A stretch of 42,840 nt of DNA from positions 42,782,527 to 42,825,366 of the forward strand of contig NC_068986.1 of the NCBI RefSeq assembly GCF_001194135.2. Reading direction: 5' to 3'. This stretch comes from Octopus bimaculoides. Taxonomy: Eukaryota. Shown piece by piece: positions 1-33,002 of this stretch (the stretch's first letter is position 1; the number at the start of each line of letters is the position of its first letter). A program made the translations under genes and the position numbers. The notes beneath the pieces are model-generated. The model was given only the letters and a program-made list of their open reading frames with translations. It searched no databases and was not told the DNA's origin.

Positions 1-30
1 TATATGTATATATATGTATATATATGTATA

Positions 31-62: not shown

Positions 63-69
<7 letters not shown>

Positions 70-582
70 AATAATTTAAATAGTTGTGTTCTCCAGCCGG
101 CAACATATACTGCAGTAGAGTATTCTATGCAGAATTGTTCCCGGAATTTTGCGCGCCGGAGCTGAGGCATTTTGAAAAATAGCCCCAATGTAATCGGTAG
201 AACTATATGCAAGTCTTATTTCATGAAGACAATTCGTGTATAGTTCTGCAAATTATATTGATTCTAGAACGTCTATGCTGATGAGAACACGGATGTTGTT
301 ACGTAAGTATGACGCTAATGTTCGAAACTGCAGTACATAGATAATTCATTATTGTGTATATTTCTCATTTATATGTATCTATAAATATATATGTATATAT
401 ATATGTGTGTGCGTGTGTATATATGTAGATGTGTGTGTGTGTACATGTATGTATCAATCTATGAATATATATATGTATATGCATCTATGAATATATATGT
501 ATATATATCTATGAAAACCGGTTAGAAAAAATCTTCATTAAATTATGCTCCCAGTTCAGCATTCTGGCTTTTTTTACATTTT

Positions 583-622
<40 letters not shown>

Positions 623-624
623 CA

Positions 625-662
<38 letters not shown>

Positions 663-706
663 ATATATATGTGTGTATCTATGTATATGAATCTCTGAAT
701 ATATAT

Positions 707-2290: not shown

Positions 2291-2940
2291 AGAACAAACA
2301 GGATCCCACGTGACCATCGGCCATTTTTTTTCTTCTCCTAACTTGTGTTTCATTCTTTCTTCCAGTTGCAGATGGACAAGGAAGACGTATTCTTGTCTGT
2401 CTTCTGTCCAAGCCTGTTTCTTCGTGTTTGCAGCCACAACTTCGTTTAGGCTTAGCAGCCCTTCTTGGTTGTTTTCACTGTCCTGTTTTTGTCACCAAGT
2501 TTGACAAAATTCCCAAATTCCAAATTTTATCTAATTTGCTTTTCGGGAGCAACCGTTTTATCGAAGGCATATCTTGTCGTGAATTGCTCGAAATACGGAT
2601 TAGAAAAACAGTCGACAACTGATGAAGTGTCGTTCTGTATGCTGTTTGTCTTGCTTTCCCTTTGTTTCCTTCGTTGTTCGCAAAGGAAATTCATAATCTA
2701 TGTCCTCGAACTTCGTAGTTTTTGGTGTTTACGTTTTGTGACGTCTTGTGCCCATATATGCATATGTATATACGTATACTTGTAAGTATGTACGTATACG
2801 TATGTATATATATATGCATGCATATATATATATATATATATATATATTGTTTATATATATATATTGTTTATATTATTATTTGATTGAACGCCACGCATCC
2901 TTTTCCAAGTAAGTTTTATATATNNNNNNNNNNNNNNNNN

Positions 2941-2983
<43 letters not shown>

Positions 2984-3450
2984 CATGTGTATATGTATAT
3001 GTGTATATATACTCACACATACACACCTGCGCGCGCGTGTGTGCGAATGCGGGTATGTTGTATTTAATGGGAGATTAAAAGATGTAAATCTATAGTTTGT
3101 TTTAGTCAAGGGGGACATTTTAAGTTGCGATAAAAAAATGTTTATGCTTGGGAAGAAGTGATTGTATGAAACAGTTTAATGTTGTTTGTGTTGTTCATTA
3201 TTGCGCTGTTGTTTTTGACAGGAATCTGACAGAATTTCTAAAAGGAAATATTGTTATAGAAAAATAACTTTTCCCAAAATTTACCAACATTGTTCTTGTC
3301 ATAATTTTGGCAATCAATCACTAGCTGCCATACAAAATCATCCTAAACTACGAAACGACAAATGCATAAGTATATTCTAAATTGATAAATCACCTACTAA
3401 TTTTTTTTTTTTTTGTATTAACATTTGGTATTCATAATCGTAAAAAATAT

Positions 3451-3606
3451 GCTGTATGATGAAGAAGCTCACGTTGCAACCATGTGGTTTCACGTTCGAT
3501 CCCACTGCGTGGTACGTTGGGCAAGTATCTTCAAATTTCGTCCCAGGCTGATTAATTAATGCCTTGCGAGTGTATTTGGTTGACAGAGGTTCTGTGGAAG
3601 CCCGCC
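3451..3606 (+). mobile_element. SINE family 1 (tRNA head plus CORE-like block; OR1/OR2-like), degenerate 5' half
   Basis: GTTCGATCCCACTGCGTGGTACGTTGGGCAAGT matches the full copy at 7396-7804. Confidence 0.75.
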
Positions 3607-3741
3607 ACATAAAAATAGGCATACCACAACATACATAGTTTCGATTTACGTCTTTTTTGGCTTTACACCCGAAATTAATGGAAAAAATATTGTTATATTT
3701 CGGGATTGTCATTTCTATTTTTTCTTTGTTGCCAAATGAAC

Positions 3742-4023
3742 ACACGCACTATATATTCGTTTTTCATTCGTTTCTTATTGTTCTGTTGTTTTTTTTTATC
3801 GTATGTCCTTTGTCTGGAAATCTTCATCTGTGACGCTTCTGTGACTCTTCTGGCGATACGTCTCCTCTATAGACGATGAGAATGGACTAAACAGAACAGG
3901 AAGAGACACGTGAAATGGAAGAGTCACTGCGGAGGTTACGAATGTGTTTAAAGATTTCCAGACTATGTACATAAGATAAAATAAGAACAATAAACGAATG
4001 AAGAACGAATATATAGTGGGTGT
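3742..4023. mobile_element. Foldback/MITE-like element with about 110-bp imperfect terminal inverted repeats
   Basis: The left arm ACACGCACTATATATTCGTTTTTCATTCGTTT...GTCTGGAAATCTT...GTGACTCTTC is the reverse complement of the right arm GAAGAGTCAC...AAGATTTCCAGAC...AAACGAATGAAGAACGAATATATAGTGGGTGT. Confidence 0.75.
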
Positions 4024-4487
4024 ATTTATGTAGCAAAAAGAAGACAATTTCGAAGTATAACAGTATGTGTCAACACATAGTTTCACATCAAGAATTTTGC
4101 AAAACAAATTCATAAACGTAATGGGAAAAAAATAAGCAACAAATTCAACTAATTTATCATTTTATACGTCTCTGTGAACAAATTTAAAAGCATAAAAAAC
4201 TTTTTTTTAAAAAACCTCACCTAAATACCAGTTTTGAAAAGGAAAAAAGTAAAATAAAATACATGTGAAAATATGTAGAAACCCTCTATTAAGACGGATA
4301 TGAGCCAATATTTCTTAAAAGTTATTTCGTGTTACGTCACTTTTCGAGTTAAGTCGCTTGATTTGAACTCACCCATTAACTGACTAAATTGAGATATGCC
4401 TGTATACGCGCATACACACACAGAACACACACACAACAGACACACTCACACACACACACACACACACAAACACACACATATATACAT

Positions 4488-4640
4488 TTGGACAAGTGGT
4501 TAGCGTGTTGCACTCACAAGCGCGAGATCGTGGTTTTAATTCCTGGACCGGGTGGTGCGTTGTGTTCTTGAACAAAATACTTCATCTCACATTGCACTGC
4601 GATCATTTTGGCACTTGACGCGTGGTGCACCGTCTAACGT
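4488..4640 (+). mobile_element. SINE family 3 (tRNA head plus CORE-like block), partial
   Basis: Head AGTGGTTAGCGTG...TTAATTCCTGG followed by GCGTTGTGTTCTTGAACAAAATACTT, homologous to the copy at 31310-31609. Confidence 0.6.
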
Positions 4641-4776
4641 CGATCACTATACGCAAATCATTTGCGCAGTTAATTCGGCAAAAGCTGAACACTCATTTAT
4701 TGTCTTCGACGAGGAGTTACAGATTTTTTTCAGTCAGCAGTTATATTTTCAGGCGGGATTTTTCTCTGCTTTTAAT

Positions 4777-5030
4777 CTATTTGTTTAGGCGATTTGAACT
4801 TTTTGTACACCGTCTCATAAGAACTTTCCTCTCCCTGGAGATTTTGATCTTGTATACGGTGGCCTTTCTCTCCCGGACACATATGTAGCATATGACTTGC
4901 ATTACAGACATGAATTGTTGAAGTTTCATGTCGATGTCTGGTGAGGAGAGACATTTTAGCCAGTTTTGTTTACGGATCTCTTTCTCAATATGTTTCCAGT
5001 TTGCCTTATGTAAGTTCAACAGAAAATAAA
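4777..5030 (-). mobile_element. CR1/L2-like LINE fragment from the endonuclease-RT linker
   Basis: ORF 4777-5019 reads NLHKANWKHIEKEIRKQNW..., resembling the NF.KANW...DW motif just after the APE domain. It has the same strand and colinear order as 707-2290 and may be the same interrupted element. Confidence 0.65.
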
Positions 5031-5200
5031 CTAAATTTCGGACGCACTATACCTGTGAAAACAGTCTAGAAAATTGGGCAAACACTTCTAGAAGTATGTG
5101 TGTGTGTGTGTGAATTAACTAATAGTCATTTTAATCGATTGCACTCCTGCTCCAACACAAGTACAGTTACACACAAGAACATGGAGTGTACAGATTCAGA

Positions 5201-5336
5201 GAATAACCGGTAGATGGATACATTTACAAAGAATTCCAAACTTTAAAATCACATGCATTTATACTTCATATTTATTAAAAGTTTATTAATAAAACCAGAA
5301 AATGAAGAGGGATAATGGGAGATGAGAGATGAGGAT
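5201..5336. repeat. 136-bp insert flanked by the 9-bp direct repeat AGATTCAGA; inverted copy of 9361-9496
   Basis: 5202-5337 is the exact reverse complement of 9361-9496. AGATTCAGA occurs at 5192-5200 and 5337-5345. Confidence 0.9.
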
Positions 5337-5699
5337 AGATTCAGATAGACAGTGAGGCAGACAAAATTATACAGATTAGTGCTTTCGTTGTATTGCTCGA
5401 AACTGCCGCTTTACTTTGTTAGCATAATTCAGCTGCTGCACAATTTCATTGATAAACTGCTTTACCACGACACACATAAACGTACATACACAAATATTCA
5501 GTTTATCTCCTATACATTACAGTGTGAGCAATATATAAGAACTGTAATTATGGTTTCAAATCTTGGCACAAGGCCAGCAAGTTCGAGGGGTAGATGCCAT
5601 GACGGGTGAAATCACTGGGTCTTAATTCGAAGAATATTTTAAGCTACATTTTCAGCGCCACCTGGCTGTTGAACGAAATGCCTAGCCGACCGATGGAGA

Positions 5700-6090
5700 G
5701 CGACTGTAAACGCAATAATTTGAAGGAACTATATCAGGAGAATATGATGATTTCAGGAGTTCTTGAATAACATTTTTTGGGCCAGATTAACAGCGCGGGG
5801 GTGACGCACCCATCCAAGAAGCACGTCATGTCGCTGGTCAAGTTCTTTCAGGTGGATTGCCCTTAAGTGGAAGTGATGACGATATGAAGAGAGCACCTCA
5901 CCTGCTAGATAAAAATGTCCTAGTGCTTTAGAGCAGATACTCGTGGATAAGTTGGTTCAGTCAATCCACATTGAACTTACCAGGTTCGCGGTAAAGCAGA
6001 GAAGCTTTGAGATCGAATTGAGAAGTTTCGACAGGTTTGGAACCGTAGCTGAAGGCAAAGAGATGCAGATGTCGGAGATGCTCCATTTTC
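5700..6090 (+). pseudogene. Possible highly decayed Tx1/L1 ORF2 C-terminal fragment
   Basis: Weak peptide echoes (KELYQE, TFFGP, GGLPL, KFRQVW) of the Tx1 ORF2 tail at 14450-15200. Not a firm alignment. Confidence 0.25.
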
Positions 6091-6721
6091 TTTCAGTTAC
6101 TTGTATATATATATATATATNNNNNNNNNNNNNNNNNNNNNNNNNNNNNNNNNNNNNNNNNNNNNNNNNNNNNNNNNNNNNNNNNNNNNNNNNNNNNNNN
6201 NNNNNNNNNNNNNNNNNNNNNNNNNNNNNNNNNNNNNNNNNNNNNNNNNNNNNNNNNNNNNNNNNNNNNNNNNNNNNNNNNNNNNNNNNNNNNNNNNNNN
6301 NNNNNNNNNNNNNNNNNNNNNNNNNNNNNNNNNNNNNNNNNNNNNNNNNNNNNNNNNNNNNNNNNNNNNNNNNNNNNNNNNNNNNNNNNNNNNNNNNNNN
6401 NNNNNNNNNNNNNNNNNNNNNNNNNNNNNNNNNNNNNNNNNNNNNNNNNNNNNNNNNNNNNNNNNNNNNNNNNNNNNNNNNNNNNNNNNNNNNNNNNNNN
6501 NNNNNNNNNNNNNNNNNNNNNNNNNNNNNNNNNNNNNNNNNNNNNNNNNNNNNNNNNNNNNNNNNNNNNNNNNNNNNNNNNNNNNNNNNNNNNNNNNNNN
6601 NNNNNNNNNNNNNNNNNNNNNNNNNNNNNNNNNNNNNNNNNNNNNNNNNNNNNNNNNNNNNNNNNNNNNNNNNNNNNNNNNNNNNNNNNNNNNNNNNNNN
6701 NNNNNNNNNNNNNNNNNNNNN

Positions 6722-6756
<35 letters not shown>

Positions 6757-7168
6757 AGGCAGAGTAGTGTGATTTTAAAGAAATTTAACATATTTCTAAT
6801 CGGTCAAGTGACTCCAGACAAAGTTTTCCTCCATTGGCTTGAAAGCAAATTGATTGATTGACTGTTGTTGTTAGCTCCGCAGCGTCACAGACTGGAGAAA
6901 GCTATAAAAAGCGTTCGAGTCGTGACTCTCTTGTAAACTATTTCTCCAGAATATCTTTAATTTAAGATGATTTGCTATTTTCAGCAGATGAATAACGATT
7001 CCCAATCGTTGAACAAGGGACCAGGGGTTCACGTACATAGCAAAACACAACAAAGTGAATAATATCTAATTCAGTTATTACGTGTATACTTCAAATGTAA
7101 TTATTACACTGTACATATATTATGAACTTTATTTCTACTGTAACTATATTGTAATATATATAATACTG

Positions 7169-7384
7169 AGGCGGCAAGCTGGCAAAATTGTTAGCACGCC
7201 GGGCAAAATGTTTAATGGCATTTCGTCTGTCTTTACGTTCTGAGTCCAAATTCCGCCGGTGTGGGCTTTGTTTTTCATCGTTCCCGGATCGATAAATTAA
7301 GTACACGATGAGAACTGGGATCGATGTAATCTACTTAGCACCTACCCAGAAATGGATGGCTTGGTGCCAAACTTTGAAACTAAT
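7169..7384 (+). mobile_element. SINE family 2 (tRNA-like head, MetaSINE-like central block)
   Basis: A-box-like CTGGCAAAATTGTTAG, B-box-like GAGTCCAAATTCC, central TTTCATC...GATCGATAAATTAAGTAC. More than 15 copies in the window. The superfamily name is from memory and needs a library search. Confidence 0.85.
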
Positions 7385-7395
7385 ATATATATATA

Positions 7396-7804
7396 GGCGC
7401 AGGAGTGGCTGTGTGGTAAGTAGCTTGCTTACCAACCACATGGTTCCGGGTTCAGTCCCACTGCGTGGCACCTTGGGCAAGTGTCTCCTACTATAGCCTC
7501 GGGCCGACCAAAGCCTTGTGAGTGGACTTGGTAGACGGAAACTGAAAGAAGCCCGTCGTATATATGCATATATATATATATATATGTATGTGTGTTTGTG
7601 TGTCTGTGTTTGTCCCCCCACCATCGCTTGACAACCAATGCTGGTGTGTTTACGTCCCCGTAACTTAGCGGCTCGGCAAAAAGAGACCGATAGAATAAGT
7701 ACTAGGCTTATAAAAAATAAGTCCTCGGGTCGATTTTCTCGACTAAAGGCGGTGCTCCAGCATGGCCAGTCAAATGACTGAAACAAGTAAAAGAGTAAAA
7801 GAGT
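7396..7804 (+). mobile_element. SINE family 1, full-length copy with internal (TA)/(TG) microsatellite
   Basis: Head GGCGCAGGAGTGGCTGTGTGGTAAG...GGTTCAGTCCC, CORE-like GGCACCTTGGGCAAGTGTCT, microsatellite at about 7560-7610, 3' part ending CATGGCCAGTCAAATGACTGAAACAAG(TAAAAGAG)n. Confidence 0.88.
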
Positions 7805-9029
7805 ATATAATATCAAGAGGCACAGGAGGATATTCTTTTGTTTGTAAAATTACGTTTCACCTGATGATTACGGTCTTTTTTTTATGACTTACTCCATTAA
7901 ATCGGAAATTCGAACGCGTCAAACAGTAACAGTAGAGTGAAGTATCAGCCGACTTTCAATAACTATAAACTTGGCACCATGTATTTTTAGCTCTTTTCTT
8001 TTGTCTGTAAGCATATAAGGTTATTTCATCCATGTACACAGTTGCACACACACACACATACACAAACACACACAATGAATATGCACGTCTCGCGGTAGAA
8101 CTTCACAAATAAATCCAATAAATAATTTTAAAAAATTGAAGTAGAGCTAAGACAAAGCCAATGTGAAATGAAGAACGGAAATCGAAGAATTTCGAATATA
8201 TCATTCAACTACGGTAGTAGTTCAATATCATTCAACAATGGTAGTAGTTGAATAACATTCTTAAGGCCGCAATTTACACACATACCGCATTTTCAGAGCT
8301 TGTCAGTAATTCAGTTCTTAACCAAATGGAAAACCGCTAACATTTCTGAAGAGGACTGGTCCTAGCTACATTTTGGTGAAATGAAATTGAGATTTGGTCC
8401 CGTAGATAAAAGTTTACATCAAAATTTGTAGCGACGTTATAAGAGAGTAAGTAACGCCTTCAATCAAGTTTAGATTTAAATAGCTTTCTTATTTTAGAAG
8501 CAAAATATATTTATCTTAGCTTCAATGAAAGTGTGAAGAATTTCATAGTTTTTGTCCCATGCAACAAGAATTTGTATAAAAAAATTTGTGAGGTAAAATA
8601 TCATGGAAAAAATATAAGGCAAAAAATTGGATTTAAGTATAATTAACTATCTTATTTTAAAAACAAACTATATTTCAATTAAGCTTAAATGATAGAGCTC
8701 AATTCGAAGAATTTCATGGTATCAATCTCATGCAAAAAGTTATTAGTTTTTGGATCTCAAATTTGAGGGTGATAATATAGTTCTATACATTTTTTTTATG
8801 AATATGGTTCAAGGAAACTTTTAATATATGTCATCGGCATCATTGAGGTAAGGAAAAATTAACAACGACACCGCTAATTGATACATTTGAAACATTATTA
8901 ATTAGCACAATAGCATAGCCTGGACAAAACATGGATTATATGGAAAAATGCGAGCAAGAGAAATAATATTCTTAAGATTATATATGTGGAAAAGTACAGG
9001 ACAAGTTATTACATCTTGTAAAGTACACA

Positions 9030-9773
9030 AGAAAAGTTTAACTTAAAATATTGCAGCTAAGGATAAAATTTGAATATGAAAAATTATTTGATTTTAATTT
9101 ACAAACTAACATAATTAAAAAAGGTACCATCATTTTGTTAAAATATTGACATACTAGAATACTTAAAAAATGAAAGTCAGAAGTACCAGTATAGCTAAAG
9201 TTTTAAGCAAAAGTAGAACAATATATATGGTAGGCAAATTCATTATGTAAAAAATAAAAGCATTGTTCAAGACTAAAAATGTGAAAACTTGGCAATAACA
9301 CAGGCAATGACTCAAAATTTTACTGTGAATTTGTTGTTATAGGTAGATTCTACTGTAATATATCCTCATCTCTCATCTCCCATTATCCCTCTTCATTTTC
9401 TGGTTTTATTAATAAACTTTTAATAAATATGAAGTATAAATGCATGTGATTTTAAAGTTTGGAATTCTTTGTAAATGTATCCATCTACCGGTTATTATTC
9501 TATTTATTGTACTAATGATGTACTAATGTTATTTTATATAACCTATTTTCAAATTTCCAATTATTAATTAAGGATTAAAAAAAAGAATTTTTTGAAGTGC
9601 AAAAAATATTTTGAGTTCTTTTTTTATTTTTAAAAGAAGTAACAAGTAATAACAAATAGAAGTAATAACTTGTAATAAAATTTTTAGTTTTAATAAAAGC
9701 TAATACTTTCTAAATCATAATATTTTATTTGAAATTTGATCATCAGCTGCAATATTTTAAGTAAAACTTTTCT
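9030..9773. repeat. AT-rich segment bounded by a 29-bp inverted repeat (9030-9058 / 9745-9773)
   Basis: AGAAAAGTTTAACTTAAAATATTGCAGCT versus the reverse complement of AGCTGCAATATTTTAAGTAAAACTTTTCT, 1 mismatch. Confidence 0.55.
9361..9496. repeat. Partner and probable donor of the 136-bp inverted repeat
   Basis: Exact reverse complement of 5202-5337; no flanking direct repeat seen at this copy. Confidence 0.9.
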
Positions 9774-9889
9774 CCTGTAATTTACTAGATATAGTAACCT
9801 ACTGTTTTTTTTTCAACTTTTTTTTTTCAACTTTTCAAGATGAATATTATTTCTTCTGGTCGCATTTTTCCATGTAATAATTCAATATG

Positions 9890-10255
9890 TGTAGGAGAGA
9901 GTGAGAGAGAGAGTGAGCTAGGGTGTGTGTGTGTGTGTTTGTGTGTGAGAAAGAGAGAAAGAGAGAGAGAGAGAGCGTGTGTGGATTTCCGTTGGATTTT
10001 TGTGTGTATGTGCGCATGTATTTGATTATAGTTAGTCCTTATTTGTATATTTGTATATGTGTATATGTGTATGTGTATTATTGTGTGTGTGAGTGTATCG
10101 TGTGTATGTGTATAGGTGTATGTGTGGGGGAGCGTGTGAGAGAGAGAGACAAAATAGAATGTGTGTGAATTAGCAAATTACCGTTGGATTTTGTGTGTAT
10201 TTGTGCATGTGTATGCGTGTATGTGTGTGTATGTGTGCATGTGGTTGGTCCTTAT

Positions 10256-10298
<43 letters not shown>

Positions 10299-10300
10299 TT
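9890..10300. repeat. Compound (GA)n/(GT)n/(GTAT)n microsatellite tract
   Basis: Direct reading. Confidence 0.9.
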
Positions 10301-10619
10301 TATTAGCACGAACCTGTGAACCAGAGAATGTCTTGCCATTTGAATATCTTGTCATTTTTCTGCTCTTGCAGTTGGTCGTACTGTCATATTTCGGTGGCTA
10401 AACAAAGATAGTGCTTAAGTATGTCATCTTAATATCATAGATTGAATTTGAAGTCAATATTTGTAAGAGACAAGAAAAAGTGTGTGTNNNNNNNNNNNNN
10501 NNNNNNNNNNNNNNNNNNNNNNNNNNNNNNNNNNNNNNNNNNNNNNNNNNNNNNNNNNNNNNNNNNNNNNNNNNNNATATATAATGTGTGTGTGTGTGTG
10601 TGTGTGTATGGTTTTTTTT

Positions 10620-11090
10620 CACTCCTTTACTTGTTTTTGCCATTGGAGCACGGCTTTGCTGAGGCACCGACTACTCAAATGAATCAACTCAGTCTATCGG
10701 TCTCTTTTGGGGTAAAGCTAAGTTAGAGGGACGTAAATAAATTGACATCGTTTATCGAGAATTGGAGGACAAATGCTGACATGCACATACAAACAAACGA
10801 GTACACACACACACACACATAAAGCTACACACATGCACACACATACACACATACAAATATATACGGCGGGCTTTCACACAGTTTCTATCTACCAAATACA
10901 CTCGTGAGGCATTAGTCAGCATGGGTGTATATATATACTCTTTTTGCTCTTTTACTCTTTTATTTGTTTCAGTCATTTGACTGTGGCCATGCTGGAGCAC
11001 CGCCTTTTATTCGAGTTAACCAACCCCATGACTCATTCTTTGTAAGCCTAGTACTTATTCTATCGGTCTCTTTTGCCGAACCGCTAATTA
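10620..11090 (-). mobile_element. SINE family 1 fragments (two 3' parts and one 5' part)
   Basis: TACTCTTTTA..TGTTTCAGTCATTTGACTGTGGCCATGCTGGAGCACCGCC and CTATCGGTCTCTTTTG are reverse complements of the 7396-7804 copy. Confidence 0.8.
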
Positions 11091-11651
11091 TGTGTGTGTG
11101 TATGTATGTATGTATATGTATGTGTCTATGTATGTATGTATGTATGTATGTATATGTATGTGTCTATGTATGTATGTATATGTATGTATACATAATTATA
11201 TGCATAACTGCTTACGTATTCGTTAGCATGAGTGTGAGTGTGTGTGCATATGTGTTTGACTTCTTTTTATTGAAGTTGATTATCTCCATAGTCTGCCTCG
11301 ATCGTGATCATGCATGTATACTTTGGATTATGCACTCCTAGGTGTACATAGATAATCTTTTTTAGACAATATGATGTGATTTGAAAGTGATTTCGTTGCA
11401 ATTTTTAGCAGATCAAGAGACCACGAAGTAACTCTCAATTTGTTTTATATGTATGCTTAGGCATACAAAAATATCACACAAAGCGAGACGTAGAGTATTA
11501 AGCATGCCAAGAGATTCGTCTCTTTTAGCAAGGACACGTGCAGGGCTAAGACAGATATCAGGAGTGATTTCGATATCACTACGGGTAACTTTCACATAGT
11601 TGAAACGTGCGTAACTACATTTGTTTCTCCTTAACAATATGTGCACGAGCA

Positions 11652-11710
11652 AAGGTAGTGTGCTGGCAGAATCATCAGCACGCCGGGCGAAATGCTTAAC
11701 GGTATTTCGT
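11652..11710 (+). mobile_element. SINE family 2, 5' head with A box, interrupted by the Tx1 tandem
   Basis: AAGGTAGTGTGCTGGCAGAATCATCAGCACGCCGGGCGAAATGCTTAACGGTATTTCGT matches the heads of intact copies (7169, 33003). The SINE match stops at 11710 and resumes at 15398. Confidence 0.85.
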
Positions 11711-13427
11711 TCCTGTGAATTATCTCCTGTCATATGAAATTGGTGAATTATTGTGAATACTTCTGTGTTACTCTGTGAAAACTGTTTGAATTTCTGTAAG
11801 TTGTCTCTGTGAATAATTGTGATTTTTGTGGAATTTATTGTTGTAACGTTACACGCGAGCCGCTGCATTTTTTCCCCAGCTATGGTGAGTGGTAGTGTTT
11901 CCAGTATGGAGAGCTACGCCATGGCCGCCGCAGAGAAGAAGCCAGTGCCGCTGGAAACCAAGTTGATCGAGCTGGATATGGAAGAGTGAGCAGAAGCAGG
12001 AATTTGATAGAGGTACAGGGAGACTCATACAAATTGTCCCCACGTAAAGAGACCAAGGAAGATAAAATTCTGAGGGCTGTTGTGTATCGTGCACAGGCTG
12101 TCGAGATCAGTAAAATTGAAATGGTGACGGAAGAGGAAATTGAGGAGTGCCTGGGTGAAATTGTGAATGAAGCCACGTACATCGGCAGAGGAAGAAAGTT
12201 CGGTACGATAGAGGTGAGGTTTGCCACCATAGAAGAGGCAGCCAAACATGCGACCAACATTTTAAGAAACACGAAAATAGCATTACTACCAAGTTATAGA
12301 GGAAGAAGAAGTGTGAGAATGCGTATTCCGAGAGTGCCACTAGAAATTAAACCGGAGTGGTTGGTTGCAACAGTTCTGTCTGCAACCAAGGAGGATCCGG
12401 AATTGGGACCAGTGGCGGAATCAAAAGTGCGCAACTGGTGGAGATTTGGACTCGAAATGTGGCTTTTTGCCACATTCGAGGACTTAGAAACAATTCCCTA
12501 CCAGATAGAAGTGGAGGACGAAAGAACGTTAAATGTCGTAGTCGAGGGAAGGAAATCAAATTGTTACATGTGCGAGGAAAGAGGTCATATGAAGACCAAA
12601 TGCCCCCTATATGAGTTCACACAGCTACAGCAAGAGAAAACACAAGCAGAGGAGGAAAACATTGTAAACCACACTGAGGAAATGAAAGAGAGACAGAAGT
12701 GTGAAACAGAGAAAACAAAGAAAAAGAACGAAAATGGAGCTACTAACCCTAAAAGCGATAGAAAAATAAGTCAAAGGAACGGTCAACAGAAAATAAAAAA
12801 GAGATAGGAAAGCCAGAAAGTTATAATATACAAGAAGAGGAGGAGAGAACGGATAAAGATGTTAAATACAAAGGGATTTTGATAAAACACGAGAAGAACA
12901 AGCAGATGGACAGAAAAATCACGAAGTTGGAAGAAATAATAAGGGGGAAGATGCCGGAAACCTGTGCTGAGAAATGCCTTTTAATACACGAGGAAAACTA
13001 TTGTGAGTACATAAAAGAACTTGGTGAAAATGTAACAACGAAACGGGTATGGTTGGTGGAGAGACCACCCCCTAAAACTTATTTGCAGTTGATAAAGACG
13101 GAAGTAACAGTGATTAATGGGAGAAAAATAACGCAAGTATTTCAGTTTTTTGAGTTGCAAAACTGTTAAAATGTATGCATGATGTTTAAGTAAAAGTGAA
13201 AAACTGAATAAATGTAACCACCCGACTTCGGGGGTCGAGTAGACATTGCGCCTCATTTTTTCATTCTTGCATATTATCATTTTATTTTAATTTTTCTTCT
13301 ATTATTATCATTCGCTTTTGTAATTTTAGTTCCCCGATTTTATGTTTGTTACGTTTTGTAATGTCTTTCTGTTTTGTGATGTCCTATAAAAACTCTTTGT
13401 ATAGCCCTTTTTGGGTAATAAAGAAAT
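11711..13427 (+). mobile_element. Tx1/L1-clade non-autonomous element A, ORF1 only (HAL1-like)
   Basis: 5' UTR rich in TGTGAA, a frameshifted ORF1 at 11882-13169, a T-rich 3' UTR, and a terminus GCCCTTTTTGGGTAATAAAGAAAT followed by the target motif. No APE or RT sequence seen. Confidence 0.75.
11986..12807 (+). CDS. Main open segment (273 aa) of a gag-like ORF1p with a CCHC zinc knuckle
   Basis: VVVEGRKSNCYMCEERGHMKTKCP gives C-X2-C-X4-H-X4-C preceded by V.GR, typical of Tx1/L1-clade ORF1. The likely start is ATG 11882 (MVSGSVSSMESYAMAAA...), with a frameshift near 11986 and a continuation at 12879-13169. Confidence 0.75.
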   Translation: MSRSRNLIEVQGDSYKLSPRKETKEDKILRAVVYRAQAVEISKIEMVTEEEIEECLGEIVNEATYIGRGRKFGTIEVRFATIEEAAKHATNILRNTKIALLPSYRGRRSVRMRIPRVPLEIKPEWLVATVLSATKEDPELGPVAESKVRNWWRFGLEMWLFATFEDLETIPYQIEVEDERTLNVVVEGRKSNCYMCEERGHMKTKCPLYEFTQLQQEKTQAEEENIVNHTEEMKERQKCETEKTKKKNENGATNPKSDRKISQRNGQQKIKKR

Positions 13428-13444
13428 CGGTATTTTGTCTGTCT

Positions 13445-15397
13445 CTTTTGTTTCTTACGCGTCGCACATGTGTTCGTGGCGAAAATTGCTGTTTCTTACT
13501 GTTAATATTGCTAATAACTGCTGTTTCTTGTTGAATTGTTGAATTTCTTAACTGTTGGAGTTTTCATTTGAAAACACTAAGTGCTTGTAGAAAGCACGCG
13601 TTATTCATTCCTCCGTTAGGGGAAGAATGTCGTCTAGCGAGGAGCCTACCGTTGGAACAGAAATGTTTGTTTCTCCTGTTCAAAGGAAGAATTACATGTT
13701 GTCTGGCGAGGAGCCAACTACGAGCAAGGAAATAGTGGATTCCCCCGTTGCAAAAAAGAATGACAAAATGTATGAGTTATTTGGAGATGTATCTGAAAGC
13801 TCGTCAGAACTTTCACTAGAAGAATTCCCGAGTTTGCCAAAAAACAAAAGTATTGTGTCCAAAAGAATAATTGATGCACCTAGCATCCAAACTGAACAAC
13901 CGAAAAAAGAAAAAAAGAGTTTTGCGTTGGCAGCTGGGGATAGAACCCGGCTGTTTTCGACGAATAAGTGTAATTTCATGAAATACAGTGAAATTATGTA
14001 AATAAACGATAACGTGGTTAAAATACAACCACCGGAGAAATTACAATTAGAAAAAAAAAAAACAGAAAACAATAATATTCAAAACTTACTGTTTGCAAAA
14101 AAGAAAAATTGAGAATTGCCTGAAGCCAATCTGTAGCGACGTGGTTTATCTGACAAGAGGCAGGAAATTTGGTACGGTGCAAGTAAGGTTTACCAACAAA
14201 GAAATTGCACAGAAACATTCAGTAGAAACGCTGAAAATGGCCTACGTGGCGCCCCACCCCACCTATATAGGGATGAGAACGTCCAAAATTAAAATCACGA
14301 GGGTCCCACCGGAAATGGATCCTATGTGGTTGGTAGCGGCAGTCTTAATCAAACAGGAAGATAAAATTACTCTCCTCTAGGCTGCCGCTACTGAAAACGC
14401 TAACTGGACTGGTCAAACAGTCTCCTCATCCAGGCTGAACCCGAGTTCAAAAGTTTTTGCGAACAGGAAGCCTGGTGTTCTCGTAGACCGTGGTCGAGTG
14501 AATGGCATAAAGAGTGCCGTAAGGCCCTCTTGCTATTCCGGCGCTTGGGCAACACCAGTGGTGGGGATTCCATAAAGATTTTATATAGTGGGTTGGTAGA
14601 GTCTGAATGCGACGATGGCCTGGGGGTGACTCTAGGTCTCGGGTTTAGTTATCTGGACAGCCTGTTTCACCGTATATTCGGGTTGAGAACGTTGGACAAC
14701 TTCCAAAAGTCCTTAACCTGGCAATGATACAGGGATAAGTTCGCAAGACACGGTAAGCGTCAGTCACCGACCTGTCCAAGATGCGGGTGAGACAGGGAAA
14801 CCGTCCATCACGCTATTGTTCAGTGTCCGGAAATATCTGAAATGTGGACTTATGCTGAACACCTGCTGCCCGGTGAAGGAAGAGTACAGCTGTCGACTGA
14901 GTTAATTATAAAAATTGACCCACCGGGAGTTTTAACAAACGAAAGCAAGAATTGTTTTCTCACGGTTGAAGCAATAGCGAAAGAGGCAGTATGGTAGACT
15001 AGGATAAAAGGAATTAATACAGGCAACTTTATCTCTGGTCACAATTTACGATCATTCTTTTATTTTTCATTTGAAAAAGGTGTGGCTGGAGAAGAGATGT
15101 CTGTCGGAGTGTACGTTCCAAAAGAGATGGAAGCATGTTGCACGAGTGTTGTGCGTGCAAGGAACTGTATGAATAAACGGAAAAAAGGTACCAGCGATAG
15201 ATCGGGGCTTGTGGGGTCGGAGCGTGGCCTGATCATCGCTTCATTTGTATTGTCCCTATATTGCTAATTTCATTCGATTTTTTAAATATTTCATTTAATT
15301 TTTAAAAGTCACATTTAATGTAAAATCATAGCATTACTGATCCCATCAGTTGTTCTGTCCATTTCTATGTTTAGCCCCCGGTGGGCAATAAAGAAAT
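13445..15397 (+). mobile_element. Tx1/L1-clade element B, internally deleted (ORF1 N-half joined to ORF2 C-terminus)
   Basis: ORF1 remnant 13627-14435 (KKSFALAA; YLTRGRKFGTVQVRF...RVPPEMDPMWLVAAVL) is homologous to element A. From about 14445 an ORF2 tail follows (DNFQKSLTWQ, TCPRCG.DRETVHHAIVQCP zinc finger, AKEAVW). Terminus GCCCCCGGTGGGCAATAAAGAAAT. Confidence 0.8.
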
Positions 15398-15567
15398 TGG
15401 TATTTCGTCTGTCTTTATGTTTTGAGTTCAAATTCCACCGAGGTCGACTTTACCTTTCATCCTTTCGGGGCCGAAAAATTAAGTACCAATTGCGTACTGG
15501 GGTCGATCTAATTGACTGGCCCCCCTCCCCCAAAATTTTGGGCCTTCTTCCTAGAATAGAAAAGAAT
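15398..15567 (+). mobile_element. SINE family 2, remaining body (B box, core, tail) of the interrupted copy
   Basis: TGGTATTTCGTCTGTCTTTATGTTTTGAGTTCAAATTCC...TTTCATCCTTTCGGGGCCG continues the SINE at the point where 11652-11710 stops. Confidence 0.85.
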
Positions 15568-15740
15568 CGTTACTACGCCGGGCAAAATGCTTACTGACAT
15601 TTCCCTCGTTTTTCCGTTCTGTCTTCAAATTTCGCCAAGGTCGATTTTTACCTTTCATCCGTTCGGAGTTAAGCACTGGGAGGCGATGTAACCGACTTAA
15701 CCACTCCCTCGAAATTACTGGCCTTCTGCGAAAATTTTTA
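15568..15740 (+). mobile_element. SINE family 2, degenerate tandem copy
   Basis: CGCCGGGCAAAATGCTTA...GGTCGATTTTTACCTTTCATCC. Confidence 0.7.
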
Positions 15741-16081
15741 ATCAATATGTACATGGATAAGTTCAGTCGCAATATGGGTAACTTTTGGTAAACTGAAATC
15801 TGTGAATTAGTGGGATTGTTCCTGCTCAACAAAATGTGCATCTCGACTGAAAGAAACCATTGTTCCAAAATGTACTCCTCTTTACCTTATATGTGAATGT
15901 ATACAAATATATATTTTAAATGTAATCAATCATCAGATCTAATCAATAGATTCCAATATCTTGAGACAAATGAATTGAATAAAATGACTGCGAATGTAAA
16001 ATACTGGATCTGTTACTTTATTATAATTTGAGTATAATTTTCGGTAGACTCAGTAAAATTACTTGTGTTATGCAATGTTCT

Positions 16082-16300
16082 CAGGGTGGCGAAATGGCAG
16101 TATCGTTAGCCCGCTGGACAAAATGCTTCACAGCATTTCGTCCAACTTTACGTTTTGAGTTCAAACTCCGCCGAACTTAACTTTGCCTTTCATCTTTCGG
16201 GGTCGATAAAATAAGTACTAGTTGGAGACATGGGGTCTGTGTAATCGACTTACCCCCACTCCAAAACTTCTAACCTTGTGCCAGAATTGGAAATCAATAT
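16082..16300 (+). mobile_element. SINE family 2
   Basis: TGGCAGTATCGTTAG, GAGTTCAAACTCC, TTTCATCTTTCGGGGTCGATAAAATAAGTAC. Confidence 0.8.
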
Positions 16301-17694
16301 TTTAGCGAGGTATGGGGGCAAGTGCTACTGTATATATCAATAACTTCACTGCCTTAGTTTCATCTAAAGCTCATTTTTTTTTTGCGGTATTAATATTAAT
16401 GAGGAGGGGCATGTCGTCTGTCTGTAGGTTCTAGGTTCAAATTCTGGGTCGATGAAATAAATATCAATACATTTCCCACGCACATTTGTTTCATGGTTAA
16501 TGTACTACAATATATATGTGAGTGCCAATCAAAAACGTTATTTGTCTATATATGGCCTCTGCTACTAAACGAATTTGACAATTTTTCTGTCGATTTAATT
16601 TCTAGATGCAGCTTTGCTCCTCGCTTCCTACATTCTCTGCCAACCTTTAGTCCTCTTTCTTTTCACTTAACCTCCACAATGGCTTCGCTGAAAGCTAAGA
16701 ATCTCTCCAGCTCGTTTCATCCAGTATTTACTTCCTCTCCCTTCGTTCACTTCTCCCCTTACTCCGCACCACTTCTCTCCGATCTCCTCTCTTCTACTCA
16801 TCACATCATTCCTTGTACTTTCACTTCATTCCATTAAATATTTTCTAGCTTGCGGACAGAGAGACAATAACCTCACCTTATCTCTCTTTGTCTTTCTCTT
16901 TCTCTATCTCTCTCGCTCTCGCTCCGTCTCTCTCTCTCTTTCTCGCTCTCCCTCCCACTTCTCTCTCTCTTAACCTCTCATATTCACTTCCTACAGAAAA
17001 CCAAGAACTCGAAACATTAAAGTTTTTACTCTTCACGACAATTGAACATATCTGATTCTAATATGACCTCTCCTTTGAACTATCACTTGCCTCTTGGGAT
17101 TCTAGATTTTATCATAAGTTCTGTTTCAGCAACTTTATTGACAATTGACCAACAACAACAAAGACACAGGAAACAAAGAACATGAAAGAAAGAGAAAGTT
17201 ACGACAAACACTGACCCTTGAAATCCTTGTAAATTGCAGAGCTGAAGACATCTGACATGGCAAATGACGACATCATTTTCTGGAAAGTTACATTTCATTA
17301 AATTGAATTGAAATTTAAGCATAAATAGTCCTAAGTAAATACTGCAAACCTTGTTTACGTTAATCCAGCGACTATTTTGCTTCAATGATAACACACGTAT
17401 ACATAGACAGACAGTTATAAGATATGAAAATCTCAGTCATAAATAAAATGAATTTGACGTATTTACTCCTGTTTAAATTTCTATAAATTACATTTCCTTA
17501 TGAATACATAAAACCGAATTCAATTTTTATAGCCATATTAAATTTTAAAATAATGAAATTAAGGTGTATGAAGCAACTCTAAAAATAAATTTTATTGATG
17601 AGTTTTACAATATGATAATTACAGAAATTCGCACTATTAACCAGTAGCATACACACACAAAATCACAAAAAATGCAAGCACATGAGTGTGCGTG

Positions 17695-17818
17695 CGCGTG
17701 GTGTGACATGGTGTGGTGTGGCATGGTGTGGTGGTGGTAGTGGTGGTGGTGGTAGTGGTGGTGGTGGTAGTGGTGGTGGTGGTAATGGTGGTGGTAATGG
17801 TGGTGGTGGTGTGTGTGT
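17695..17818. repeat. (GGT)n trinucleotide repeat
   Basis: Direct reading; produces the poly-Val ORF 17713-17937. Confidence 0.9.
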
Positions 17819-18052
17819 ACTTCTATATTTTATTTAAGCTTGTATGGTACCCTGATACATTGGAGTTTCCAAGCATGACTGGGTTCCAGGGTTCCAACAC
17901 CATGAAACAGACCACTAGAGCATGGCGGATCTACTAACAGACCATTGGACCGGTTTAAAAATATACTATACTCTATGTTTGTATTGAGTACTCCTTCTCC
18001 GGTTCATTAGTCAGCAACTGATATATAGATAAACATGTATACATGCATACGT

Positions 18053-18089
<37 letters not shown>

Positions 18090-18280
18090 NNNNNNNNNNN
18101 NNNNNNNNNNNNNNNNNNNNNNNNNNNNNNNNNNNNNNNNNNNNNNNNNNNNNNNNNNNNNNNNNNNNNNNNNNNNNNNNNNNNNNNNNNNNNNNNNNNN
18201 NNNNNNNNNNNNNNNNNNNNNNNNNNNNNNNNNNNNNNNNNNNNNNNNNNNNCGTCGCTTTGAGATCGCGACCTGTTCAC

Positions 18281-19180: not shown

Positions 19181-20614
19181 ATCTCAAGCTATAGTAATTT
19201 ATTTGCATATAAGCAGTTTAATTATCATGTCAGATGTTCTTCAGTAAATTCGTGAATATTTTATAAGTATAGGTAAGATCAAATGTTGGTTATTTTTATT
19301 TATCTTATTTATCTTCCGAAGAAGTTTATTGTCGGCTGGAGAAAAAAAAGACAAGTGATTTAAAATGTGTTACTTATAAGAACTCGAAAGTCATTGAGTG
19401 TGTGTGTGTGTGTGTGTAATGGAACAATTTATCATCAAACCAAATATTTGATTTGAACGCATACAATAGAGTATACTCCATTAAAATCACTATTGCCACG
19501 AGCTAGAATTAAACTGGGTGACGGATTAGATCTACCATCCAAGGACACGAAGGGTTACTATCCCTACTGGTTTTCCATCTCCCAGAATTCTACCCATAAT
19601 GCATTAGCCCATCTGGTTTTAGTAGAAGATTCTTATCGTAGATAATATGGTGTGGATTTGAACCCGAAATCGCATAGTAGTTAATCAATGTTCTTTGCTT
19701 CGCAGACACTTCATTTTTCGTTGACTTAATGGGTATGCGTATATATATATATATATATATATATATATNNNNNNNNNNNNNNNNNNNNNNNNNNNNNNNN
19801 NNNNNNNNNNNNNNNNNNNNNNNNNNNNNNNNNNNNNNNNNNNNNNNNNNNNNNNNNNNNNNNNNNNNNNNNNNNNNNNNNNNNNNNNNNNNNNNNNNNN
19901 NNNNNNNNNNNNNNNNNNNNNNNNNNNNNNNNNNNNNNNNNNNNNNNNNNNNNNNNNNNNNNNNNNNNNNNNNNNNNNNNNNNNNNNNNNNNNNNNNNNN
20001 NNNNNNNNNNNNNNNNNNNNNNNNNNNNNNNNNNNNNNNNNNNNNNNNNNNNNNNNNNNNNNNNNNNNNNNNNNNNNNNNNNNNNNNNNNNNNNNNNNNN
20101 NNNNNNNNNNNNNNNNNNNNNNNNNNNNNNNNNNNNNNNNNNNNNNNNNNNNNNNNNNNNNNNNNNNNNNNNNNNNNNNNNNNNNNNNNNNNNNNNNNNN
20201 NNNNNNNNNNNNNNNNNNNNNNNNNNNNNNNNNNNNNNNNNNNNNNNNNNNNNNNNNNNNNNNNNNNNNNNNNNNNNNNNNNNNNNNNNNNNNNNNNNNN
20301 NNNNNNNNNNNNNNNNNNNNNNNNNNNNNNNNNNNNNNNNNNNNNNNNNNNNNNNNNNNNNNNNNNNNNNNNNNNNNNNNNNNNNNNNNNNNNNNNNNNN
20401 NNNNNNNNNNNNNNNNNNNNNNNNNNNNNNNNNNNNNNNNNNNNNNNNNNNNNNNNNNNNNNNNNNNNNNNNNNNNNNNNNNNNNNNNNNNNNNNNNNNN
20501 NNNNNNNNNNNNNNNNNNNNNNNNNNNNNNNNNNNNNNNNNNNNNNNNNNNNNNNNNNNNNNNNNNNNNNNNNNNNNNNNNNNNNNNNNNNNNNNNNNNN
20601 NNNNNNNNNNNNNN

Positions 20615-22499: not shown

Positions 22500-22837
22500 T
22501 TACTCTTTTACTCTTTTACTTGTTTCAGTCTTTTGATTGTGGTCATGCTGGAGCATCACCTTTAGTCGAGCAAATCGATCCCTGGACTTATTCTTTGGAA
22601 GCCTAGTATTTATTCTATCGGTCTCTTTTGCCGAACCGCTAAGTTACGGGGACATAAACACACCAGCATCGGTTGTCAAGCGATGTTGGGGGGGGGGGAC
22701 AAACACAGACACACAAACACACACACACACACACACANNNNNNNNNNNNNNNNNNNNNNNNNNNNNNNNNNNNNNNNNNNNNNNNNNNNNNNNNNNNNNN
22801 NNNNNNNNNNNNNNNNNNNNNNNNNNNNNNNNNNNNN

Positions 22838-30881: not shown

Positions 30882-30942
<61 letters not shown>

Positions 30943-32254: not shown

Positions 32255-32900
32255 TGTGACATCCAGCTTATATATATGGCAAGAGACTTCAGAGAAATCG
32301 ACGTGCCATCAGTGGACCTGCTTGAGGTGCATGCAGAGCGACGAAACCGTCTTGCTCAAATTCGTACAGTGCCCGGACATTGTTGTCTTGTGGGGTTATG
32401 TCGAGCAACTACTATGGCGTGTCGGATGTCGAATTCAGATGTCCGCCGACTCCACCGCGAAGATCGTCCCGCCACTTTCCTTTGACCAGGAAAGACGGGA
32501 CTTTCTTCTGCATAGTAGCTATGATGAGAGAGACAGTGTGGCCAACAAGACTAACAGAATAGGACTGATGAAAGGCACATTCTAGTGCTCGTCTACATTT
32601 TAAATTTACACTTGAAAAGAAAGTGGAGGATACAGAGAGAAATGTTGCCTCCCACAAAGCTCGCTGAATACAGCGAGGATAGCTCGAGTAAGTGGGCCTG
32701 TTCTAAACTTGTGCCTGTAAGATGGAGAGAAGTGATGTAGAGGGAGAATCCCTTTTGTGCTGTTTGAGGTCAAGTTGATTCAGGATTGGCAGGGGTTTTT
32801 GGTTACCCTCAGTGGTACTCCACCAATTAGGGATTTTAGTTGTGATCAAGTTTCATGTCAATTGTTATTATTTTATTGCACCTGTACATATAAATACCTT
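32255..32900 (+). mobile_element. Tx1/L1-clade ORF2 3' fragment and 3' UTR, related to element B
   Basis: TCLRCMQSDETVLLKFVQCPDIVVLWGYVEQLL...KIVPP...RETVWPTR aligns with TCPRCG.DRETVHHAIVQCPEISEMWTYAEHLL...KIDPP...KEAVW.TR of element B. Confidence 0.8.
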
Positions 32901-32959
32901 CCCCGTGTTTTTGTATTGTCCCAAAGGATTTTTGTGGCCCTTGTAGTCAAAGGAGAAAG

Positions 32960-33002
<43 letters not shown>

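What the first reader, a model, noticed from the sequence alone, without database searches (positions are those of the whole stretch)
11652..15567. Two different Tx1-type retroelements stacked at one site inside a SINE, suggesting SINE-targeted insertion
Seen: a family-2 SINE is split. The head ends ...CGGTATTTCGT at 11710 and the body resumes TGGTATTTCGTCTGTCT at 15398. The same motif, CGGTATTTTGTCTGTCT (13428-13444), sits exactly between elements A and B, giving three target copies around two sense-oriented inserts, the pattern of successive target-site duplications. A and B are distinct families: 38 of 80 identical residues by hand in the alignable ORF1 block. The site lies between the A box (about 11664-11675) and the B box (15424-15436), so insertion breaks the SINE's Pol III promoter. 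Established: Tx1-clade APE elements are often sequence-specific (U2 snRNA, 5S rDNA, tRNA spacers, microsatellites, DNA transposons). Inference: this lineage uses an abundant SINE as its landing site and disables it on insertion. I do not know of a description of this, but I cannot search.
Basis: partly seen in the sequence, partly recalled or inferred. Interest (0 to 1): 0.85.

Follow-up and report, generated by a model that had tools for sequence, protein, structure and literature searches.

The report
Two retroelements stacked in one SINE site
Two different dead LINE-derived retroelements sit head to tail at exactly the same base of an abundant octopus SINE, and a third independent copy elsewhere in the Octopus bimaculoides genome sits at that same base, so this LINE lineage probably lands preferentially at one SINE sequence; only three insertions could be examined.

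Summary
A SINE is split at 11710/15398. Element A (11711-13427) and element B (13445-15397) lie in sense orientation. They are separated by a 17-bp copy of the SINE motif, which gives three target copies. The motif belongs to the SINE, because uninterrupted copies carry it and the joined flanks rebuild an intact SINE.

New evidence: a second A copy on O. bimaculoides chromosome CM046603.1 has the same 3' junction (AATAAAGAAAT|CGGTATTTCGTCTG) and a SINE head upstream. Its host SINE is a different, unrelated copy. Chance per insertion is about 1e-4.

A is an ORF1-only derivative. B is an internally deleted element that keeps an ORF2 C-terminus (zf-RVT). Full-length relatives (Argonauta hians) have APE, RT and zf-RVT domains, and their best solved-structure match is human L1 ORF2p. 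Tx1 membership is plausible, but no labelled reference was available to test it.

Relatives in other families or species end in microsatellites or unique DNA, so SINE landing is a feature of particular families.

The same 3' tail closes one SINE subtype, which suggests the lineage also mobilises SINEs.

No genome-wide flank tabulation was possible. I rate this a new variant of a known kind (target-specific L1/Tx1-group LINEs), of moderate interest.

The parts
11652..11710 (+). SINE head (5' part of the split SINE), with the A-box-like TGGCAGAATCAT at 11664-11675
   Evidence: Aligns to positions 13-71 of the joined SINE and to 7 other copies
11700..11710 (+). Target copy 1, CGGTATTTCGT: the left target-site duplication of element A
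   Evidence: Read directly. The same 11-bp span is duplicated around the L001 A copy
11711..13427 (+). Element A: a 1.7-kb ORF1-only (non-autonomous) LINE derivative, 5'-complete, with frameshifts
   Evidence: ORF1 is 82% identical to O. bimaculoides A0A0L8FKL1. It carries a CCHC knuckle. No ORF2 similarity was found. The 5' end is the same as in the L001 copy
11883..13169 (+). A ORF1 remnants in three frames (11883-11989, 11986-12807, 12879-13169)
   Evidence: P0005/XP_052822358 reads continuously through the part that is frameshifted here
13393..13427 (+). Conserved 3' terminus of A (...TAGCCCTTTTTGGGTAATAAAGAAAT), a GCCC-N5-GGG hairpin followed by AATAAAGAAAT
   Evidence: Alignment A3; 4-bp stem kept in 8 sequences
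13428..13444 (+). Target copy 2, CGGTATTTTGTCTGTCT: the right duplication of A (first 11 nt) and the left duplication of B (17 nt)
13445..15397 (+). Element B: an internally deleted LINE (5'UTR, ORF1 N-part, ORF2 C-terminus, 3'UTR), with several stops
13627..14380 (+). B ORF1 remnants (13627-14001 and 14093-14380)
   Evidence: The second piece is 47% identical to the A ORF1 block and 39% to P0001
14440..15166 (+). B ORF2 C-terminal remnant with a zf-RVT CCHC motif
   Evidence: Pfam PF13966, E 8.8e-5. tblastn to P0066 residues 886-1095 and P0060 residues 857-1105
15363..15397 (+). Conserved 3' terminus of B (...TAGCCCCCGGTGGGCAATAAAGAAAT)
15398..15414 (+). Target copy 3, TGGTATTTCGTCTGTCT: the right duplication of B and the start of the SINE body
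15398..15567 (+). SINE body and tail (B-box-like GAGTTCAAATTCC at 15424-15436; tail ...CCTAGAATAGAAAAGAAT)
32316..32963 (+). Element C: a 5'-truncated relative of the same LINE lineage (ORF2 C-terminus plus 3'UTR). It ends in (AAT)n at about 32964-33005 and is not at the SINE site
   Evidence: tblastn to P0060/P0009, 58% identity; sequence read

Best explanation
A and B are dead, non-autonomous derivatives of two families of one cephalopod LINE lineage of the L1/Tx1 group (APE endonuclease, RT, C-terminal CCHC; ORF1 with a CCHC knuckle). They share a conserved terminus of about 35 nt ending GGGYAATAAAGAAAT, with no poly(A).

Shown: each inserted independently, in sense orientation, at the same phosphodiester bond of an abundant SINE (TTAR|YGGYATTTCGTCTG, between the A-box-like and B-box-like motifs). 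A left an 11-bp duplication and B a 17-bp duplication.

Inferred: the lineage's endonuclease nicks the bottom strand at this sequence and reverse transcription starts on the conserved 3' tail. The second-strand nick falls 11-17 bp downstream. Every insertion therefore leaves an intact target copy on each side, which a later insertion can use again, and this gives the stacked A-motif-B arrangement.

Inferred: the enzymes come in trans from an autonomous relative. One SINE subtype carries the same 3' tail, so the lineage probably mobilises SINEs as well as landing in them.
For: Three motif copies surround two sense-oriented inserts. The motif is part of the SINE consensus, and the joined flanks restore an intact SINE. 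An independent A copy in L001 (O. bimaculoides CM046603.1) has the junction AATAAAGAAAT|CGGTATTTCGTCTGCCG and a SINE head upstream with the same 11-bp span duplicated.

The two host SINEs are only 79% identical, no closer to each other than to random copies (76-89%), and they have different 3' parts. These are therefore separate insertions and not copies of a composite. About 17 SINE-borne sites lie in 77.7 kb, so a random insertion hits one at the exact bond and in the right orientation with probability about 1e-4 (computed).

A and B are distinct families: 47% identity in ORF1 and no DNA similarity beyond the terminus. The 3' terminus is conserved among A, B, SINE-alpha tails, Argonauta LINEs and L007. 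Full-length relatives have APE, RVT_1 and zf-RVT domains, and their best PDB match is L1 ORF2p at E 2e-53.

Target-specific Tx1 families that land in other transposons are established (PMC4494074). Animal RRM/CCHC ORF1s are described as consistent with Tx1 (PMC5203782). Head-to-tail arrays of the lineage occur in Argonauta.
Against: Only three insertions, in about 78 kb, could be examined, and two of them are the ones that drew attention. No endonuclease from an Octopus autonomous copy was recovered. One copy with the identical terminus, from Logan runs of unknown species, is followed by GAACATTTCTTGCG, which is not a SINE. Relatives C, the Argonauta elements and L015 end in (AAT)n, (ATT)n and (CTAT)n, so SINE landing is not a property of the whole lineage. 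The left duplication of the L001 copy matches only 8 of 11 bases (TGGTATAACGG against CGGTATTTCGT). A 12-N scaffold gap lies inside the L001 copy.
Confidence: 0.65

Rival explanations
1. The preference is for a short motif, not for the SINE. The endonuclease recognises only a short core, roughly YATTTC three bases downstream of the nick. The SINE is hit mainly because its very many copies hold a large share of the genome's instances of that core.
For: The L007/L008 copy with the identical terminus has a non-SINE flank that shares CATTTC at +4 to +9, in the same register as CGG(C/T)ATTTCGT. Octopus SINEs make up about 11.6% of the O. vulgaris genome (PMC13282606).
Against: It rests on one flank from an unidentified species. 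All three copies from O. bimaculoides-type sequence are in the SINE, whereas under a bare 6-mer preference many non-SINE sites should compete.
Confidence: 0.2
2. Integration is assisted by homology. Source copies embedded in a SINE give read-through transcripts that carry SINE flank, and this flank anneals to nicked SINE DNA elsewhere. The junctions and the duplication are then inherited rather than made anew by a specific endonuclease.
For: Both A copies have the same 11-bp duplicated span and the same 5' end. Co-transcription with the target is known to reinforce target-specific integration in R2 and other elements (discussed in PMC4494074).
Against: B has the same 3' junction but a different duplication length (17 bp). 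After A only 17 bp of SINE follow before B begins. The host SINE flanks are no more alike than random copies, so no transduced flank is visible.
Confidence: 0.08
3. A composite unit (SINE head, A, SINE body) was amplified, or the segment was duplicated, so the copies are not independent insertions.
For: The offsets of the 5' and 3' junctions are identical in the window and L001 A copies.
Against: The host SINEs are 79% identical, less than each is to several uninterrupted copies (up to 89%). They belong to different subtypes, one with a beta tail and one an alpha tail/dimer, and the outer flanks are unrelated. B cannot be explained this way.
Confidence: 0.03
4. The arrangement is chance nesting in a repeat-rich genome, or an assembly misjoin.
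For: The assembly has gaps and repeats are dense.
Against: Exact-bond coincidence has a probability of about 1e-4 per insertion and is seen three times. No gap lies within 10577-18089. Only 17 bp are shared at the A/B junction, too little to cause a misjoin, and a misjoin of two SINE-embedded copies would still imply targeting.
Confidence: 0.03

Closest known systems
Tx1L/Tx2L of Xenopus laevis, inserted in the Tx1D/Tx2D DNA transposons (Christensen et al. 2000, as cited in PMC4494074)
   Same: An APE-type LINE of the L1/Tx1 group that lands at one sequence inside another, more abundant mobile element. An endonuclease with sequence-specific nicking is the established cause there.
   Different: The target here is a SINE (a retroposon with Pol III-type boxes), not a DNA transposon. 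The endonuclease specificity has not been measured. Tx1 clade membership has not been tested by phylogeny.
Tx1-Mar families and SINEU of crocodilians (Kojima 2015, PMC4494074)
   Same: LINE families and the SINEs they mobilise share a preferred landing site in another transposon. Nested stacks of elements at the site are reported.
   Different: There the landing pad (Mariner-N4_AMi) is unrelated to the mobilised SINE. Here the landing pad is itself the SINE, and one subtype of it carries the LINE's 3' tail.
Microsatellite-targeting and small-RNA-gene-targeting Tx1 families (Kibi, Koshi, Keno; Kojima and Fujiwara 2004, as cited in PMC4494074)
   Same: Sister families of this cephalopod lineage end in (ATT)n, (AAT)n or (CTAT)n and form head-to-tail arrays, as microsatellite-targeting Tx1 families do.
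   Different: A and B have no microsatellite tail and abut a unique-sequence motif. Whether the microsatellites in the relatives are targets or element tails was not resolved.
HAL1, the 'half-L1' ORF1-only derivatives of mammalian L1 (from my own knowledge, not checked here)
   Same: Family A keeps the 5'UTR, ORF1 and 3' tail and lacks ORF2, and exists as several diverged copies.
   Different: It belongs to a different LINE lineage, has a type I-like rather than a type II ORF1, and inserts in a site-directed manner.
R2/R1 in rDNA
   Same: Fixed junctions, fixed orientation, and reuse of a repeated target.
   Different: R2 uses a restriction-like endonuclease and a host gene as target. Here the enzyme is APE-type and the target is a parasitic repeat.

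Membership tests
Tx1 clade of non-LTR retrotransposons | RT domain groups with Tx1 references in a phylogeny (RTclass1/Repbase) | not testable with these tools
   No labelled Tx1 sequence could be obtained. The relatives found are unnamed or 'uncharacterized'. A and B themselves lack an RT domain.
Tx1 clade of non-LTR retrotransposons | N-terminal APE endonuclease, RT and a C-terminal CCHC domain in ORF2 | tested here: met
   Met for full-length lineage members P0066 and P0060 (Exo_endo_phos, RVT_1, zf-RVT). B retains only the C-terminal part with zf-RVT (E 8.8e-5, below the Pfam cut-off). The architecture is shared with the L1 clade, so it does not discriminate between them.
Tx1 clade of non-LTR retrotransposons | ORF1 of the RRM plus CCHC zinc-knuckle type (type I-like), as described for animal Tx1 (PMC5203782) | tested here: inconclusive
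   The CCHC knuckle is found (A: E 0.024; P0001: E 1.6e-4, 22 bits against a 20.8-bit cut-off). No Pfam RRM model matches. No Transposase_22 (type II L1 ORF1) match either.
Tx1 clade of non-LTR retrotransposons | Target-sequence preference (common in the clade but not universal) | tested here: met
   Three of three copies are at the same SINE bond, but the sample is small.
L1 group (L1 + Tx1) | ORF2 closest to L1 ORF2p among solved retrotransposon proteins | tested here: met
   P0066 against human L1 ORF2p gives E 1.9e-53 over residues 7-857. R2 proteins give E 1e-24 or worse.
L1 clade sensu stricto | Poly(A) 3' tail and type II ORF1 (coiled coil, RRM, CTD) | tested here: not met
   The elements end in GGGYAATAAAGAAAT without poly(A). 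ORF1 has no Transposase_22 match.
tRNA-derived SINE (host element) | Short, abundant, internal A and B boxes, tRNA-related head, 3' tail shared with a LINE | tested here: inconclusive
   It is abundant, with about 15 copies in 43 kb. Conserved A-box-like and B-box-like motifs are present. The alpha-subtype tail equals the LINE terminus. However, ARAGORN and Rfam give no tRNA match.

The most novel reading that the evidence does not exclude
One LINE lineage both drives the dominant octopus SINE, through shared 3' tails, and uses a fixed sequence in that SINE's head as its sequence-specific safe harbour. SINE expansion then continuously creates new landing sites for the LINE and its non-autonomous derivatives. 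Such a self-reinforcing LINE-SINE loop has, to my knowledge, not been described, and it could help explain the joint LINE/SINE expansions reported in octopus genomes.
Probability: 0.25. Interest if true: 0.7.

Novelty: new variant of a known kind. Interest (0 to 1): 0.5.

Why it matters
Target-specific LINEs are models for how mobile elements avoid harming the host, and they are starting points for site-directed gene insertion tools. Known targets of the L1/Tx1 group are RNA genes, microsatellites, DNA transposons and LTR elements. In the literature I could search I found no SINE described as a defined landing pad. If the preference holds genome-wide, it would add a new class of target. It would also be a case where a LINE nests in its own dependent SINE, and it would bear on how SINEs (about 11.6% of the O. 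vulgaris genome) and LINEs co-expanded in octopus. If it proves to be only a short-motif preference, it is an ordinary insertion bias.

Tried and rejected
1. Genome-wide flank test: not possible. The protein word search with the B ORF2 piece found nothing. Scans of metagenome, genome and viral contig collections for the 3'-tail pattern or the SINE core gave only one chance bacterial hit.
2. UniProt octopus ORF1 models are not on record as contigs. Only XP_052822357 gave a locus.
3. Logan contigs carrying ORF2 C-terminal fragments (L002, L004-L009, L012-L015) come from runs SRR11869384-91 of unknown species. Most end before the 3' junction. Only L007/L008 and L015 were informative.
4. Rfam and ARAGORN gave no tRNA or other RNA family match for the SINE.
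5. The apparent second 'target' after SINE-alpha tails (AAGAAACGTTAGCACG, twice in L001) was considered as a further landing site and rejected. One of the two alpha-beta pairs is flanked by an outer 8-bp CTTTTAAA duplication, so it moved as a dimer unit.
6. Template switching in a single insertion event was rejected for A-B, because a full target copy lies between them.
7. No labelled Tx1 protein could be retrieved, so no clade tree was built.
8. Searches for ZCCHC3 with Tx1 and for 'inserted into SINE' returned no relevant paper.
Full report
**What is in the window**

The window is octopus genomic DNA. A's ORF1 is 82% identical to an Octopus bimaculoides protein. The assembly has N gaps, but none lies within 10577-18089.

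A short repeat with conserved A-box-like (TGGCAGAAT) and B-box-like (GAGTTCAAATTCC) motifs occurs about 15 times in the 42.8 kb. In an alignment of eight copies the consensus reads ...GCTTAGCGGCATTTCGTCTGTCTTTATGTTCTGAGTTCAAATTCC... without interruption. One copy is split:
- The head ends at 11710 (...AACGGTATTTCGT).
- The body resumes at 15398 (TGGTATTTCGTCTGTCTTTATG...).
- Joining 11640-11710 to 15409-15575 gives a sequence that aligns with intact copies without a gap at the junction.

Two inserts lie between head and body. A is 11711-13427 and B is 13445-15397. They are separated by CGGTATTTTGTCTGTCT (13428-13444). The only differences among the three motif copies are two CpG->TpG changes.

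**What A and B are**

*Element A.* A has a 5'UTR, then an ORF1 broken into three frames, then about 260 nt of 3'UTR. The ORF1 has a CCHC knuckle. Its intact form can be read from O. bimaculoides gene models. A has no ORF2 similarity. It is an ORF1-only, non-autonomous family, and at least six diverged copies have been annotated as proteins.

*Element B.* B has its own 5'UTR and ORF1 start. One ORF1 block is 38/81 identical to A's. B then jumps to the last ~220 residues of an ORF2 that carries the zf-RVT CCHC motif. It is an internally deleted element with several stops.

*Relation between them.* A and B have no detectable DNA similarity except for their last ~35 nt...TAGCCC-N5-GGGYAATAAAGAAAT. 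This terminus can form a small conserved hairpin.

*The lineage.* An exhaustive profile search with a stop-free B piece found only short cephalopod-type ORF2 fragments. Their clusters led to two near-full-length proteins: P0066 from Argonauta hians (1096 aa) and P0060 (1111 aa). Both have Exo_endo_phos (APE), RVT_1 and zf-RVT domains.
- The best solved-structure relative of P0066 is human L1 ORF2p (E 2e-53), far ahead of R2 proteins. The lineage therefore belongs to the L1/Tx1 group.
- The absence of poly(A), the absence of a type II ORF1, the CCHC-type ORF1 and the targeting behaviour all fit Tx1 (PMC5203782; PMC4494074).
- I could not obtain a labelled Tx1 sequence, so clade membership is untested.

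**Independent test of SINE-directed insertion**

The one NCBI-located relative (XP_052822357) gave a 37.9-kb locus, L001, on O. bimaculoides chromosome CM046603.1. L001 contains a second A copy (80-83% identical).
- Its 3' end reads GGGTAATAAAGAAAT|CGGTATTTCGTCTGCCGTTACGTTCTGAGTTCAAATTCC.
- Its 5' end, which is the same element start as in the window, is preceded by a SINE head ...GGGCGAAATGCTTCGTGGTATAACGG.
- The duplicated span has the same 11-bp boundaries as in the window, although only 8 of 11 bases still match.

The two host SINEs are 79% identical. That is no closer than each is to unrelated copies (76-89%). They also differ in subtype and in their outer flanks. These are therefore independent insertions, not copies of a composite.

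In the 77.7 kb of non-N sequence I could read there are about 17 SINE-borne sites. A random insertion would hit one at the exact bond and in sense orientation with a probability of about 1e-4. Three insertions from two families share the same bond and orientation.

A full target copy lies between A and B. This excludes a single event with template switching and fits two successive insertions, each of which regenerates the target. The order of A and B cannot be told from the duplications.

**Limits and nuances**

I could not tabulate flanks genome-wide, because none of the searchable DNA collections holds octopus DNA and the protein routes were exhausted.

Other members of the lineage behave differently:
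- A third relative in the window (C, 32316-32963) ends in (AAT)n.
- Argonauta elements end in AATAAAAGAAT plus (ATT)n. In one locus they form a head-to-tail array of three ~6-kb units separated by (ATT)n of different lengths.
- A Logan copy ends in (CTAT)n.
- A Logan copy of unknown species with exactly the A-type terminus is followed by GAACATTTCTTGCG. This is not SINE, but it shares CATTTC at +4 to +9 with the SINE site.

That last flank raises the rival that the enzyme reads only a short core, and that the SINE is hit because it holds many instances of that core.

**Link between the LINE and the SINE**

In L001 a SINE subtype (alpha) ends with the LINE terminus (...CCCCTCTATGTTTAGCCCATTGTGGGCAATAAAGAAAT). 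The common (beta) SINE tail...AATAGAAAAGAAT followed by (ATT)n, resembles the Argonauta LINE end AATAAAAGAAT(ATT)n. The lineage is thus a plausible driver of these SINEs as well as a lodger in them. This is inference only.

**Mechanism**

*Shown:* identical 3' junctions, fixed orientation, 11-bp and 17-bp duplications, and a conserved 3' terminus.

*Inferred:*
- A sequence-dependent bottom-strand nick at TTAR|YGG by the lineage's APE endonuclease, as established for Tx1L (cited in PMC4494074).
- Target-primed reverse transcription from the conserved tail, without microhomology. The element end GAAAT and the target start CGGTA do not match.
- A second-strand nick 11-17 bp downstream.
- Trans-mobilisation of A and B by an autonomous relative.

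Separating the A-box-like and B-box-like motifs by 3.7 kb would inactivate a Pol III promoter of this SINE copy. Nothing indicates that this has any consequence.

**Novelty**

Tx1-group families that target other transposons (piggyBac-type Tx1D, Mariner, Harbinger, LTR elements) are known. In four full-text searches I found no description of a SINE as a defined LINE target, nor of target specificity for octopus L1-Tx1 elements. Repbase and Dfam entries could not be consulted.

I rate this a new variant of a known kind, of moderate interest, and dependent on a genome-wide count.

Noticed in passing
L003 (Argonauta hians BAAFZT010000048.1) 1-15288: Three near-identical (over 99.8% protein identity) full-length ~6-kb elements of this lineage lie head to tail. 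They are separated only by (ATT)n tracts of different lengths (about 5 and about 13 units). Either they inserted repeatedly into a microsatellite or tail, or the unit was duplicated in tandem.
   Followed up: partly
L001 8937-9313 and 34357-33984 (minus strand): A SINE subtype ends in the LINE 3' terminus (...GGGCAATAAAGAAAT). In both cases it is followed by a 5'-truncated SINE that starts AAGAAACGTTAGCACG and ends ...TAGAAAAGAAT. The second pair is flanked by an 8-bp CTTTTAAA duplication, so this looks like an alpha-beta dimer SINE that moves as a unit.
   Followed up: partly
window 15560-15666: The tail of the split SINE (...TAGAAAAGAAT) directly abuts another SINE that lacks its first ~28 nt (CGTTACTACGCCGGGC...). 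This is the same kind of junction as in the L001 dimers. The SINE head contains AGAAT just before this point, so microhomology-guided template switching or end joining may create such dimers repeatedly.
   Followed up: no
window 25950, 30883-30942, 32964-33005, 33218-33240, 39982-40050, 40180-40253: Many SINE copies are bordered on one or both sides by (ATT)n/(AAT)n microsatellites. This suggests that the common SINE type has an (ATT)n tail and/or lands in such repeats, like the Argonauta LINE.
   Followed up: no
L007/L008 1394-1425 (Logan SRR11869391/SRR11869385): A copy with the exact A-type terminus GGGTAATAAAGAAAT is followed by GAACATTTCTTGCG. This is non-SINE, but it shares CATTTC in the same register as the SINE target. 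A SINE-like head lies ~900 nt upstream in the same contig. The species of these runs is unknown.
   Followed up: partly
window 2924-2940, 6121-6721, 10488-10576, 18090-18252, 19769-20614, 22738-22837, 26099-26995, 29688-29844, 37767-38057: Runs of N (assembly gaps, 3161 bases in all) explain the very low GC values in the composition profile. None touches the finding.
   Followed up: yes
P0075 (Siphateles boraxobius protein): In this fish gene model an ORF2 (APE, RT, zf-RVT) is followed by two ZCCHC3-type RNA-binding domains and a CCHC knuckle. The model may fuse one element's ORF2 to the next element's ORF1 in a tandem array. It hints that ZCCHC3-like domains are the ORF1 type of related fish elements.
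   Followed up: no
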